The position numbers and the translations under genes were made by a program. A DNA stretch of 64,000 nucleotides from Octopus sinensis (taxonomy: Eukaryota). Shown in pieces: positions 21,020 through 22,574 of this stretch; the first letter of the stretch is position 1, and every line of letters starts with the position of its first letter. The stretch spans positions 156,364,001 through 156,428,000 of the forward strand of contig NC_042998.1 of NCBI RefSeq assembly GCF_006345805.1, given 5' to 3'. Below the pieces are notes generated by a model. That model worked only from the letters and a program-made list of their open reading frames with translations. It ran no database searches and was not told the DNA's origin.

Positions 21020-22574
21020 TATTGCCTTTTTTTCGTTGCATTGCGGCAGGGGGAGGTTTCCGGCAGAGAGAAGAGAGGGAGAGAAAGTGGGGGGGTGCAT
21101 GTAATATAGGGGAGCACCAGTGGGGAAGGTTTGGGGTAAAGAGAAACGATGACAGGTAGGGTTGGTGGCAGGTTCTAGACAGAATGAAAAGTAGGAAGTA
21201 AAAACGTAGGATATCACGAGTGGGGGAGGGGGCTGGAAGGAGATAGCCGGTTGAGGCAGTGACACATTTCAAAACAGGAGGAACATAGGATAACAGGTTA
21301 AGTGGGACGTTTGATGAGCTGCGGCGCTAGCTACTTCTGTCTACAGGGAGAGAGGCAGGGGTAAATACAGTGAGGGAGTATATTGAGGGGGAGGGGTAGG
21401 AGGAACAGACACACGTAGTGGTGACGGTGGTAGAGGGGATATCCGGTGAGGATGGTGTAAACAGAGTGTTCTCCGGTATGGGTGGTGGGGGTGGGTAGGG
21501 CGGGCTAACCGCGAATGGCGGGCGGCGAAGATTTTGATTGGGGACAGTAGTGATAAAGACTTAACTTGGTACCGAGGGGGTTAGACAAATTAAAGGGTTA
21601 TATTTTAAGAACAAGCAGAATTAGTGAATAGATTCGAACATTTAAGGGTTAGCGGAAGAAATGAAATGAAATGAGAATTCTTAGCTTGCTTGCTGTGATC
21701 ATCGCTGTGTGGTCAAGAAAGGGTGAATGAGAGAGAAGCAGGGAAGCACGAGGTGATAATTTCACCGGAAGTGGGTTGGAAAGACGGAAGTTTTGATTGA
21801 AGACAGGACAGTACGGTAATGGCGGAGGACGAACGAAATATCTTCATACCGAGGCATTTTTAAAAAAGATTTTCTAGGAGGAAGGATCACGCAGGTTAGC
21901 GAATATATATATATATATATATATATGAATATAAATAAAGGGTAATAATATAGATTACTACCAGTGGCCCAGCACAAAAGACGAATTAAAACATTATTCA
22001 TACAGAAAAATATTATTCATATAGAAACATAATTAAGGGCTCCTAAATAAGGATGCCAAGTACTAGGGGCACAAAAAAAAGGGATGAATTTATCGAGAGT
22101 GAAAATCAAAAACATTTACCATTAACGATACATCTCGGACTGATCAGTTTCTACCTCTTTCTAGCAAAACAAACAGAATATGTATGCTAAGGTCGGTTTC
22201 ATCAGCGAGACACCTAAGTTAAATCGAGACGTGCAGCGCGTTAGACCATGTGTTGATCTCAACAACTTGCAGATCTTTAACTTTTCAAATCTCTGCACAG
22301 ATGCAAAATCACCCGGTGATATAGGGCATGCCGGAAAACAATTTTACGAATAAATCCATCAAGTAATATGCGAATATAAATAAAGGGTAATAATATAGAT
22401 TACTACCAGTGGCCCAGCACAAAAGACGAATTAGTCATTAGACAAAATATTATTCATACAGAAAAATATTCATATAGAAACATAATTAAGGGCTCCTAAA
22501 TAAGGATGCCAAGTGCTAGGGGCACAAAAAAAGGGAAGAATTTATCGAGAGTGAAAATCAAAAACATTTACCAT

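What the first reader, a model, noticed from the sequence alone, without database searches (positions are those of the whole stretch)
22132..22211. Intact-core hammerhead ribozyme on the same strand as the PGM3-like pre-mRNA
The minus strand reads GUCUCG CUGAUGA ... GAAA CUGAUCAG UC CGAGAU: perfect 6-bp stem I, full core, GUC site and a 10-nt palindrome (ACUGAUCAGU) typical of dimer-activated hammerheads. The base of stem II is non-canonical (A opposite A). The gene's C-terminal exons are not in the window, so this site is probably intronic and transcribed in the active sense. The three antisense motifs here are all degenerate. Self-cleavage could affect splicing or truncate transcripts.
Basis: partly seen in the sequence, partly recalled or inferred. 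Interest (0 to 1): 0.7.

Follow-up and report, generated by a model that had tools for sequence, protein, structure and literature searches.

The report
Transposon-borne hammerhead motif in octopus
The hammerhead ribozyme motif is really there, but it is a single copy of a dimer-dependent type carried by a small retroelement-like repeat in Octopus sinensis. As a lone copy it is predicted to misfold, so it is most likely a passenger and not a regulator of the PGM3-like gene.

Summary
On the minus strand, 22211->22132 holds a type-I hammerhead: CUGAUGA and GAAA boxes, a GUC cleavage site (cut between 22138 and 22137), a 6-bp helix I and the palindrome ACUGAUCAGU. Rfam Hammerhead_1 matches full length at 25.6 bits, below its gathering score of 34. 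A descriptor scan expects at most 0.01 such motifs per window.

It sits in a 1.46-unit partial tandem repeat (unit about 452 bp, no ORF) with (TA)n at both ends. That is the insertion anatomy of Penelope-like elements and animal retrozymes. Only one hammerhead is present.

As a monomer the catalytic fold is 7 kcal/mol worse than a rod in which core CUGAU pairs with AUCAG. As a dimer the double-hammerhead comes within 1.7 kcal/mol of the optimum.

Two further intact-core hammerheads lie on the plus strand (8171-8234, 58886-58974). They share the non-Watson-Crick 10.1/11.1 pair, a long helix II and a palindromic helix III, so these traits are probably lineage features.

The window is Octopus sinensis chromosome CM016860.1. 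The PGM3-like exons are on the minus strand. The only gene model recovered ends 3.4 kb upstream, so intronic sense transcription is plausible but unproven.

Verdict: a new member of a known kind, of modest interest.

The parts
22132..22211 (-). Complete type-I hammerhead motif (80 nt). Two extra wobble pairs can extend helix I to 22130-22213.
   Evidence: Sequence; Rfam RF00163 at 25.6 bits, full model; descriptor hit.
22206..22211 (-). Helix I, 5' strand GUCUCG.
   Evidence: Pairs with CGAGAU at 22137-22132: 5 Watson-Crick pairs plus 1 G.U.
22199..22205 (-). Core box CUGAUGA (C3-A9).
   Evidence: conserved positions match the RF00163 consensus.
22152..22198 (-). Helix II region, 47 nt. It comprises the A10.1/A11.1 mismatch (22198, 22152), ACC/GGU (3 bp), an internal loop, a 6-bp UUAGCA/UGCUAG helix and a 3-bp distal stem.
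   Evidence: Constrained fold; 33-nt insertion relative to the Rfam consensus.
22148..22151 (-). Core box GAAA (G12, A13, A14, A15.1).
22139..22148 (-). Helix III palindrome ACUGAUCAGU (A15.1 to U16.1). In a monomer it forms 3 bp plus a GAUC loop. Between two copies it forms a 10-bp duplex (-13.6 kcal/mol). Its AUCAG half can instead pair with core CUGAU.
22137..22138 (-). Predicted cleavage site: after C17 (22138), before C1.1 (22137); triplet GUC.
   Evidence: Position in the RF00163 alignment; inferred, not assayed.
22132..22137 (-). Helix I, 3' strand CGAGAU.
22366..22576 (-). Repeat copy B, the upstream copy on the minus strand. It starts directly at the (TA)n tract, at a position that corresponds to 13 nt downstream of the cleavage site in the unit.
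   Evidence: Direct repeats D11-D13; BLAST; alignment with about 2% substitutions and 3 indels.
22125..22365 (-). Single-copy part U of the unit. It holds the hammerhead at its 3' end.
21921..22124 (-). Repeat copy A, the downstream copy. It ends ...CCCUUUAUUUAUAUUC at the second (TA)n tract.
22575..22607 (.). (TA)n microsatellite abutting the 5' end of the element.
21903..21937 (.). (TA)n microsatellite abutting the 3' end of the element.
25587..25721 (-). Last PGM3-like exon found in the window (TVGDS...KQIKV). The GT donor lies at about 25596. The annotated model reads through it to KVRF*, ending at 25587.

Best explanation
This is the hammerhead of a small, non-coding retroelement of the Penelope-like-element / animal-retrozyme kind. 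The element inserted into a (TA)n microsatellite as a 1.46-unit partial tandem.

In the life cycle of such elements (from the literature), multimeric transcripts bring two hammerheads together. Their self-complementary helix III forms one long helix, and each core cuts after the NUH triplet. This releases unit-length RNA with 5'-OH and 2',3'-cyclic phosphate ends, which can be circularised or reverse-transcribed.

At this locus only one hammerhead is left. A lone copy is predicted to fold into an inactive rod in which core CUGAU pairs with AUCAG of the palindrome. Even if it is transcribed within a PGM3-like pre-mRNA, it should cleave poorly or not at all, and it is most likely a neutral passenger.

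Shown: the motif, the repeat anatomy, the strand relative to the exons and the energetics. Inferred: the element class, the dimer mechanism and the lack of effect on the gene.
For: - The motif is real and not due to chance.
- It lies in a B-U-A partial tandem with a unit of about 452 bp, 36% GC, no ORF of 60 aa or more confined to it and no tRNA part. (TA)n abuts both ends.
- Partial tandems, 5' truncation and (TA)n targets are described for PLEs. Naiad PLE remnants are reported in Octopus, and some Naiads carry core boxes 35-50 nt apart (PMC8557442).
- Type-I hammerheads in 150-450 bp low-GC tandem units define animal retrozymes (PMC7229834).
- PLEs are annotated in O. vulgaris (PMC13282606).
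- Dimer dependence: the monomer catalytic fold is -12.4 versus an MFE of -19.6 kcal/mol, with an HHR-compatible ensemble fraction of about 1e-6. The double hammerhead is -41.4 versus a dimer MFE of -43.1.
- Two more hammerheads of the same architecture lie in the window, each within about 10-22 nt of a (TA)n run.
- A and B differ by only about 2% in substitutions. The A.A pair was therefore probably inherited from the source copy and did not arise by later decay.
- A U.U pair at the base of helix II occurs in about 60,000 axolotl HHR_Amex2 copies, which cleave weakly as monomers and well as dimers (PMC7229834).
Against: - No second copy of this 452-bp unit could be found. There is none in the window, and ORF-based searches and look-ups came back empty. 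Membership of a dispersed family is therefore inferred from anatomy only.
- No PLE reverse transcriptase or GIY-YIG ORF is nearby. The neighbouring ORFs are LINE RT and a Pif1 helicase.
- The unit RNA is not unusually self-paired (z = -1.2), unlike published retrozyme circles.
- Nearest-neighbour energies ignore the tertiary and non-canonical pairs of the core. The monomer penalty may therefore be overstated.
- (TA)n runs lie within 20 nt of 12% of the window, so the microsatellite association is suggestive, not proof.
Confidence: 0.72

Rival explanations
1. One reading: a catalytically active intronic hammerhead, transcribed in sense within the PGM3-like pre-mRNA. Its self-cleavage would modulate splicing or truncate transcripts.
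For: - The core, the GUC site and helix I are intact.
- It is on the same strand as the exons, and no C-terminal exons lie in the window, so the next intron may span the site.
- Conserved intronic hammerheads exist in amniote RECK, CTCL and DTNB (PMC6155905).
- A mismatch at the base of helix II does not abolish cleavage in axolotl HHR_Amex2.
Against: - There is a single copy with no same-strand partner in the window, and the monomer catalytic fold is 7 kcal/mol above the MFE.
- The 10.1/11.1 pair is A.A where G-C is highly conserved (PMC4209133).
- PLE-type minimal hammerheads show low activity even as dimers in vitro.
- The retrieved gene model ends upstream, at 25587.
- The motif is explained by a mobile-element insertion.
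- In Xenopus, retrozymes are depleted from introns. This suggests that active sense copies are selected against and not co-opted.
Confidence: 0.07
2. A once-active element hammerhead that has since been inactivated by mutation: a dead relic, with the A.A pair and the 33-nt loop II insertion as decay products.
For: - It is below the Rfam gathering score, with a mismatch at 10.1/11.1 and a large insertion relative to the consensus.
- Clearly degenerate relics exist nearby: 26262-26323 with G12 changed to A, and about 55230-55311 with a lost A and no helix I.
- PLE expansion in Octopus is dated to about 56 My ago.
Against: - All three intact-core hammerheads in the window share a non-Watson-Crick 10.1/11.1 pair and a long helix II. 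Independent decay would not produce this.
- Repeats A and B differ by only about 2% in substitutions, so less than one substitution is expected in the 80-nt motif since the duplication.
- UCC/GGA of the consensus is replaced by ACC/GGU, a compensated change.
Confidence: 0.17
3. A chance occurrence of hammerhead-like boxes in AT-rich DNA.
For: The score is below the Rfam gathering threshold. The genome is AT-rich, so GAAA is frequent.
Against: Descriptor expectation is 0 to 0.01 per 128 kb against 3 observed, and 0.125 even with one core mismatch allowed. The model match is full length with E=1.5e-4 locally.
Confidence: 0.01

Closest known systems
Minimal type-I hammerheads of Penelope-like elements (Cervera & de la Pena 2014, PMC4209133; dimer cleavage also reported by Lunse et al. 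2017, cited from my own knowledge)
   Same: Type-I topology. An extra nucleotide follows A9. Helix III is self-complementary, implying action as a dimer. There is no loop 1/loop 2 tertiary motif. The motif sits in a partially tandem repeat next to a microsatellite target.
   Different: A matching extra nucleotide also lies 3' of helix II, giving an A.A pair where G10.1-C11.1 is highly conserved. Helix II is far longer: 47 nt between the boxes against 6-8 bp plus a small loop. No RT/GIY-YIG ORF adjoins this copy.
Animal non-LTR retrozymes (Cervera & de la Pena 2020, PMC7229834), including axolotl HHR_Amex2
   Same: A low-GC, non-coding unit of a few hundred bp in head-to-tail arrangement with a type-I hammerhead. 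HHR_Amex2 has a U.U mismatch at the base of helix II and works mainly as a dimer.
   Different: Only 1.46 units and one hammerhead are present, where an active retrozyme needs at least two. The unit RNA is not significantly self-paired. No expression or circRNA evidence is available.
Naiad-clade PLEs (Craig et al. 2021, PMC8557442)
   Same: (TA)n target preference, partial tandems and 5' truncation. Remnants are reported in Octopus spp. Some copies carry the two hammerhead core boxes 35-50 nt apart ('HHR_half_core').
   Different: Naiads are described as lacking canonical hammerheads. No Naiad coding sequence was found here, so the link is inference only.
Conserved intronic hammerheads of amniotes (HH9/HH10; RECK, CTCL, DTNB)
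   Same: A type-I hammerhead possibly lying in an intron in the sense orientation.
   Different: Those are canonical, monomer-competent and ultraconserved across species. This one is element-borne and dimer-dependent, and its conservation is untested.

Membership tests
Hammerhead ribozyme, type I (Rfam RF00163, clan CL00010) | Conserved core boxes CUGANGA and GAAA | tested here: met
   22205-22199 and 22151-22148.
Hammerhead ribozyme, type I (Rfam RF00163, clan CL00010) | NUH cleavage triplet with an A15.1-U16.1 pair | tested here: met
   GUC at 22140-22138; A15.1 at 22148 and U16.1 at 22139.
Hammerhead ribozyme, type I (Rfam RF00163, clan CL00010) | Three helices around the core, open at helix I | tested here: met
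   Helix I of 6 (up to 8) bp, helix II ACC/GGU plus distal stems, helix III of 3 bp plus a tetraloop.
Hammerhead ribozyme, type I (Rfam RF00163, clan CL00010) | G10.1-C11.1 pair closing helix II | tested here: not met
   A opposite A at 22198/22152.
Hammerhead ribozyme, type I (Rfam RF00163, clan CL00010) | Score at or above the Rfam gathering threshold (34 bits) | tested here: not met
   25.6 bits; no hit in the gathering scan.
Hammerhead ribozyme, type I (Rfam RF00163, clan CL00010) | Site-specific self-cleavage | not testable with these tools
   Needs in vitro transcription or end mapping. The predicted monomer fold is inactive.
PLE-associated minimal hammerhead | Located in the pseudo-LTR of an element encoding RT and a GIY-YIG endonuclease | tested here: not met
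   No such ORF is near the motif. The neighbours are LINE RT and Pif1. The partial-tandem and (TA)n anatomy is compatible with a truncated or non-autonomous copy.
PLE-associated minimal hammerhead | [quoted passage not shown] | tested here: met
   CUGAUGA-A-ACC; feature listed in PMC4209133.
PLE-associated minimal hammerhead | Palindromic 15.2-16.2 / loop 3, allowing a dimeric helix III | tested here: met
   ACUGAUCAGU forms a 10-bp duplex at -13.6 kcal/mol. The double hammerhead is within 1.7 kcal/mol of the dimer MFE.
Animal non-LTR retrozyme | Tandem units of about 150-450 bp and low GC | tested here: inconclusive
   The unit is about 452 bp with 36% GC, but only 1.46 units are present.
Animal non-LTR retrozyme | At least two consecutive units, each with a complete type-I hammerhead | tested here: not met
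   There is one hammerhead. Copy B starts 13 nt past the position of the cleavage site, and copy A ends before a second motif.
Animal non-LTR retrozyme | Expressed as highly self-paired circular RNA | tested here: inconclusive
   The circular fold of the unit has z = -1.2 against shuffles and 62% paired bases. Expression is not testable here.
Conserved intronic hammerheads (HH9/HH10 type) | Sense orientation inside an intron of an expressed gene | tested here: inconclusive
   The strand matches. The retrieved model ends at 25587, and the C-terminal exons could not be located.
Conserved intronic hammerheads (HH9/HH10 type) | Conservation at the orthologous site across species | not testable with these tools
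   No other cephalopod genome could be reached.

The most novel reading that the evidence does not exclude
Octopus carries an undescribed lineage of dimer-type type-I hammerheads. Their helix II is closed by a non-Watson-Crick N.N pair (A.A or U.U) instead of G10.1-C11.1, and it is extended to 30-60 nt. They would be spread by (TA)n-targeting Penelope-like elements, possibly Naiad-type, which are currently described as lacking canonical hammerheads. The sense copy in the PGM3-like gene could then cleave when a partner RNA is available.
Probability: 0.2. Interest if true: 0.5.

Novelty: new member of a known kind. Interest (0 to 1): 0.3.

Why it matters
Hammerheads borne by retroelements are already known to be abundant in animal genomes, so one more copy in an intron is not a surprise.

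Two points would interest specialists. First, three of three intact hammerheads in this 64-kb octopus window share a non-canonical 10.1/11.1 pair and a long helix II. If that holds genome-wide, it widens the accepted sequence space of natural hammerheads. It could also link them to a PLE clade thought to lack them. Second, the palindrome of helix III repeats the first five core nucleotides. This gives a built-in monomer-off, dimer-on switch that could be tested directly.

For PGM3 biology the finding probably does not matter.

Tried and rejected
- **Rfam gathering scan of the window:** no hits. The 4.5-kb E-value scan lost the motif to the filters and returned only microsatellite-driven miRNA look-alikes.
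- **Metagenome scan with the 19-mer GAAACTGATCAGTCCGAGA:** 8 loci, none with an upstream CUGAUGA. That number fits chance by my own rough estimate.
- **Other copies through spurious ORFs of the element in the 5.8-billion-protein collection:** none.
- **Sampling more octopus DNA by exact look-up of TE ORFs from the window:** not on record.
- **Locating the C-terminal PGM3 exons with a profile of C-terminal domains:** no cephalopod protein among the best 120 of 1655 hits, and none of 20 inspected hits carries the octopus exon.
- **tblastn and motif scans of the window for C- and N-terminal catalytic exons:** negative. The YERGRAFV match at 23809-23786 lies in a SINE-like repeat and is chance.
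- **Similarity of the flanks among the three hammerhead loci:** only microsatellites. There is one marginal 52-nt local alignment to the 55-kb relic, score 20 against a shuffle maximum of 19.
- **SINE or tRNA origin of the unit:** no tRNA.
- **Rod-like retrozyme fold:** not significant.
- **Rfam on the two plus-strand hammerheads:** no hammerhead hit at E up to 10.
- **Supplementary consensus sequences of Naiad PLEs:** not held.

Full report
**1. Observation**

Read on the minus strand, 22211->22132 is GUCUCG-CUGAUGA-A-ACC...GGU-A-GAAA-CUGAUCAG-UC-CGAGAU. This is the type-I hammerhead layout, with these parts:
- Helix I, 5' strand: 22211-22206.
- Core box C3-A9: 22205-22199.
- Helix II region: 22198-22152.
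- G12-A15.1: 22151-22148.
- Helix III: inside the palindrome ACUGAUCAGU, 22148-22139.
- C17: 22138.
- Helix I, 3' strand: 22137-22132.

Rfam's Hammerhead_1 model aligns end to end (positions 1-45 of 45) at 25.6 bits, E=1.5e-4 for a 141-nt search. The alignment shows a 33-nt insertion in loop II and a non-standard pair at the base of helix II. The consensus UCC/GGA is replaced by ACC/GGU, which still pairs.

The score is below the family's gathering score of 34. Accordingly the whole-window gathering scan returned nothing, and a 4.5-kb E-value scan lost the hit to the speed filters.

I also scanned with a descriptor of my own: both core boxes, helix I of at least 4-6 bp, at least 3 bp of helix II starting at 10.1 or 10.2, A15.1-U16.1 plus at least 2 bp of helix III, and H17. 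It recovers the site, with helix I extendable to 8 pairs by two wobbles. In 300 first-order Markov simulations of 128 kb it gives 0 to 0.01 hits. With one core mismatch allowed the expectation is 0.125. The motif is real.

**2. Surroundings**

The motif lies in a local duplication. On the minus strand the order is (TA)n - B (22576->22366) - U (22365->22125, hammerhead at its 3' end) - A (22124->21921) - (TA)n.
- A and B align over about 205 nt, with roughly 2% substitutions and three indels of 1, 3 and 11 nt.
- The unit (B+U) is about 452 bp with 36% GC.
- It has no ORF of 60 aa or more confined to it and no tRNA-like part.
- No other copy exists in the window.

So this is 1.46 units of a head-to-tail repeat with a single hammerhead. 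Copy B begins at the microsatellite, at a point that corresponds to 13 nt downstream of the cleavage site.

Neighbouring ORFs are LINE endonuclease/RT fragments and, further away, an intact 866-aa LINE ORF and a Pif1 helicase fragment. No Penelope-type RT or GIY-YIG ORF is present.

**3. Other hammerheads in the window**

The same descriptor finds two more intact-core motifs on the plus strand:
- 8171-8234: CCAUG-CUGAUGA-U-GCUG...CAGC-U-GAAA-CUAAAUUUAG-UA-CAUGG.
- 58886-58974: GUGCAG-CUGAAGA-U-UGC...GCA-U-GAAA-CGAUCG-UA-CUGCAU.

All three motifs share four traits:
- A non-Watson-Crick pair at 10.1/11.1: A.A, U.U and U.U.
- A long helix II region of 47, 31 and 58 nt.
- A self-complementary helix III of 10, 12 and 8 nt, counting A15.1 and U16.1.
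- A (TA)n run abutting the element (target) or 10-22 nt from the motif (the other two). Such runs lie within 20 nt of 12% of the window.

The 8171 motif folds into the hammerhead three-way junction as its minimum-energy structure. Rfam does not detect either plus-strand motif.

Clearly degenerate relics also exist:
- 26262-26323 (+) has a 7-bp helix I and GGCA/UGCC for helix II, but G12 is changed to A.
- About 55230-55311 (+) keeps the same ACUGAUCAGUC as the target, but has GAA-C and no helix I.

Three shared oddities in three independent motifs argue that they are lineage features, not random decay. The low A/B divergence points the same way, because less than one substitution is expected in 80 nt since the duplication (inference).

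**4. Folding**

The 80-mer's minimum-energy fold is not the hammerhead (-19.6 kcal/mol, z = -2.1). Core CUGAU pairs with AUCAG of the palindrome, extending helix I into a rod.

Enforcing helices I and III with an unpaired core gives -12.4 kcal/mol. The hammerhead-compatible share of the ensemble is about 1e-6.

For two copies, I modelled the double hammerhead with an intermolecular 10-bp helix III and helix I strands swapped between molecules. It scores -41.4 kcal/mol against a dimer optimum of -43.1, and against -39.2 for two separate monomers.

The motif is thus built to be off as a monomer and competitive as a dimer. These numbers ignore the tertiary and non-canonical pairs of the core, so they are relative indications only.

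**5. Literature context**

- Most metazoan hammerheads are type I with a short, palindromic helix III, and they work as dimers in tandem transcripts.
- PLE 'minimal' hammerheads add a nucleotide between A9 and 10.1, keep G10.1-C11.1 and have a longer helix II. They cleave poorly in vitro even as dimers (PMC4209133).
- Animal retrozymes are 150-450 bp, low-GC tandem units with type-I hammerheads, expressed as circRNAs. Axolotl HHR_Amex2 has a U.U mismatch at the base of helix II. It cleaves 22% in 1 h as a monomer and much better as a dimer (PMC7229834).
- PLE insertions are typically 5'-truncated partial tandems. Naiad PLEs prefer (TA)n and persist as remnants in Octopus. Some carry the two core boxes 35-50 nt apart (PMC8557442).
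- PLEs are annotated in O. vulgaris (PMC13282606).
- In Xenopus, retrozymes are depleted from introns (bioRxiv 10.64898/2026.07.22.740005).
- Conserved intronic hammerheads exist in amniotes (PMC6155905).
- I found no paper describing hammerheads in cephalopods.

**6. The gene**

The window is identical over 48,387 nt to Octopus sinensis chromosome CM016860.1 of assembly GCA_006345805.1, and it corresponds to record positions 156,364,001-156,428,000.

PGM3-like exons lie on the minus strand at 54063-53947, 53349-53248, 52084-52031, about 30652-30590 and about 25721-25597, with AG/GT boundaries wherever I read them.

The only model retrieved is P0001, 'phosphoacetylglucosamine mutase', 126 aa. 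It starts at an internal Met and ends KVRF* by reading through the last donor, and its CDS range is window 53973-25587. It is evidently a fragment.

The window contains neither the N-terminal catalytic exons (SHNP, DGDADR) nor the C-terminal domain (RPSGTE). A profile search for the C-terminal domain did not surface a cephalopod protein.

The hammerhead lies 3.4 kb beyond the annotated stop. It would be intronic only if the next exon lies beyond the window, which needs an intron longer than 25.6 kb. That is plausible, given a 21-kb intron between the exons at 52.0 and 30.6 kb. I rate it about two in three, but it is not shown.

**7. Conclusion**

The best-supported reading is a hammerhead belonging to a small non-autonomous PLE- or retrozyme-type element that inserted into a (TA)n tract. 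It is present here as a single, dimer-dependent copy that is unlikely to cleave its host transcript.

It meets the core definition of a type-I hammerhead. It fails two membership criteria: G10.1-C11.1 and the Rfam threshold. It also fails the two-hammerhead criterion for an active retrozyme, and it has no adjacent PLE ORF. I therefore file it as a hammerhead-type motif of element origin, not as a verified member of any sub-family.

**8. Limits**

No other octopus sequence could be reached with the tools. Family membership, covariation, orthologous conservation and transcription all remain untested.

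Noticed in passing
window 8171-8234 (+): A second intact-core type-I hammerhead: CUGAUGA, GAAA, a GUA site, U.U at 10.1/11.1 and the 12-nt palindrome ACUAAAUUUAGU. Its minimum-energy fold is the hammerhead junction. It sits 22 nt after a long (TA)n tract. Rfam does not detect it.
   Followed up: partly
window 58886-58974 (+): A third intact-core type-I hammerhead: CUGAAGA, GAAA, a GUA site, U.U at 10.1/11.1, a 58-nt helix II region and the palindrome ACGAUCGU. A (TA)n run lies 10 nt downstream. Rfam does not detect it.
   Followed up: partly
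window 26262-26323 (+) and about 55230-55311 (+): Degenerate hammerhead relics. The first has a 7-bp helix I and a GGCA/UGCC helix II, but G12 is changed to A. The second keeps the same ACUGAUCAGUC as the target but has lost one A of GAAA and its helix I.
   Followed up: partly
window 25587-53973 (-): The retrieved O. sinensis gene model for phosphoacetylglucosamine mutase is a 126-aa fragment. It starts at an internal Met in the exon at 54063-53947 and ends by read-through of a splice donor. It probably reflects an incomplete annotation of a very large gene.
   Followed up: partly
window 47874-50474 (+); degraded copy 16447-19306 (+): An intact 866-aa LINE ORF (RVT_1 1.7e-29, weak endonuclease match), with a second, frameshifted copy of the same family 31 kb away. 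This may be a recently active LINE.
   Followed up: partly
window 38851-39411 (+): An ORF with a Pif1 helicase 2B domain (1.5e-13), probably a Helitron fragment.
   Followed up: no
window 9072-10682 (+): Two adjacent GC-rich ORFs (198 and 337 aa) with internal 54-nt and 132-nt-spaced repeats and no Pfam match. They lie about 0.8-2.4 kb downstream of the 8171 hammerhead on the same strand. Their nature is unknown.
   Followed up: partly
window 19525-19818 and 15928-16254: Near-perfect tandem repeats: 98 bp x 3 (98% matches) and 81 bp x 4 (97%).
   Followed up: no
window 3.4-6.5 kb, 11.8-14.9 kb, 22826-22910 and elsewhere: Very long TA/TG-rich microsatellite tracts: 255 runs of (TA) of at least 5 units, covering 6% of the window. 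They produce spurious mir-297 and mir-1277 matches in Rfam E-value scans.
   Followed up: yes
window 59351-59450: A run of 100 N (assembly gap) upstream of the first PGM3-like exon seen in the window.
   Followed up: no
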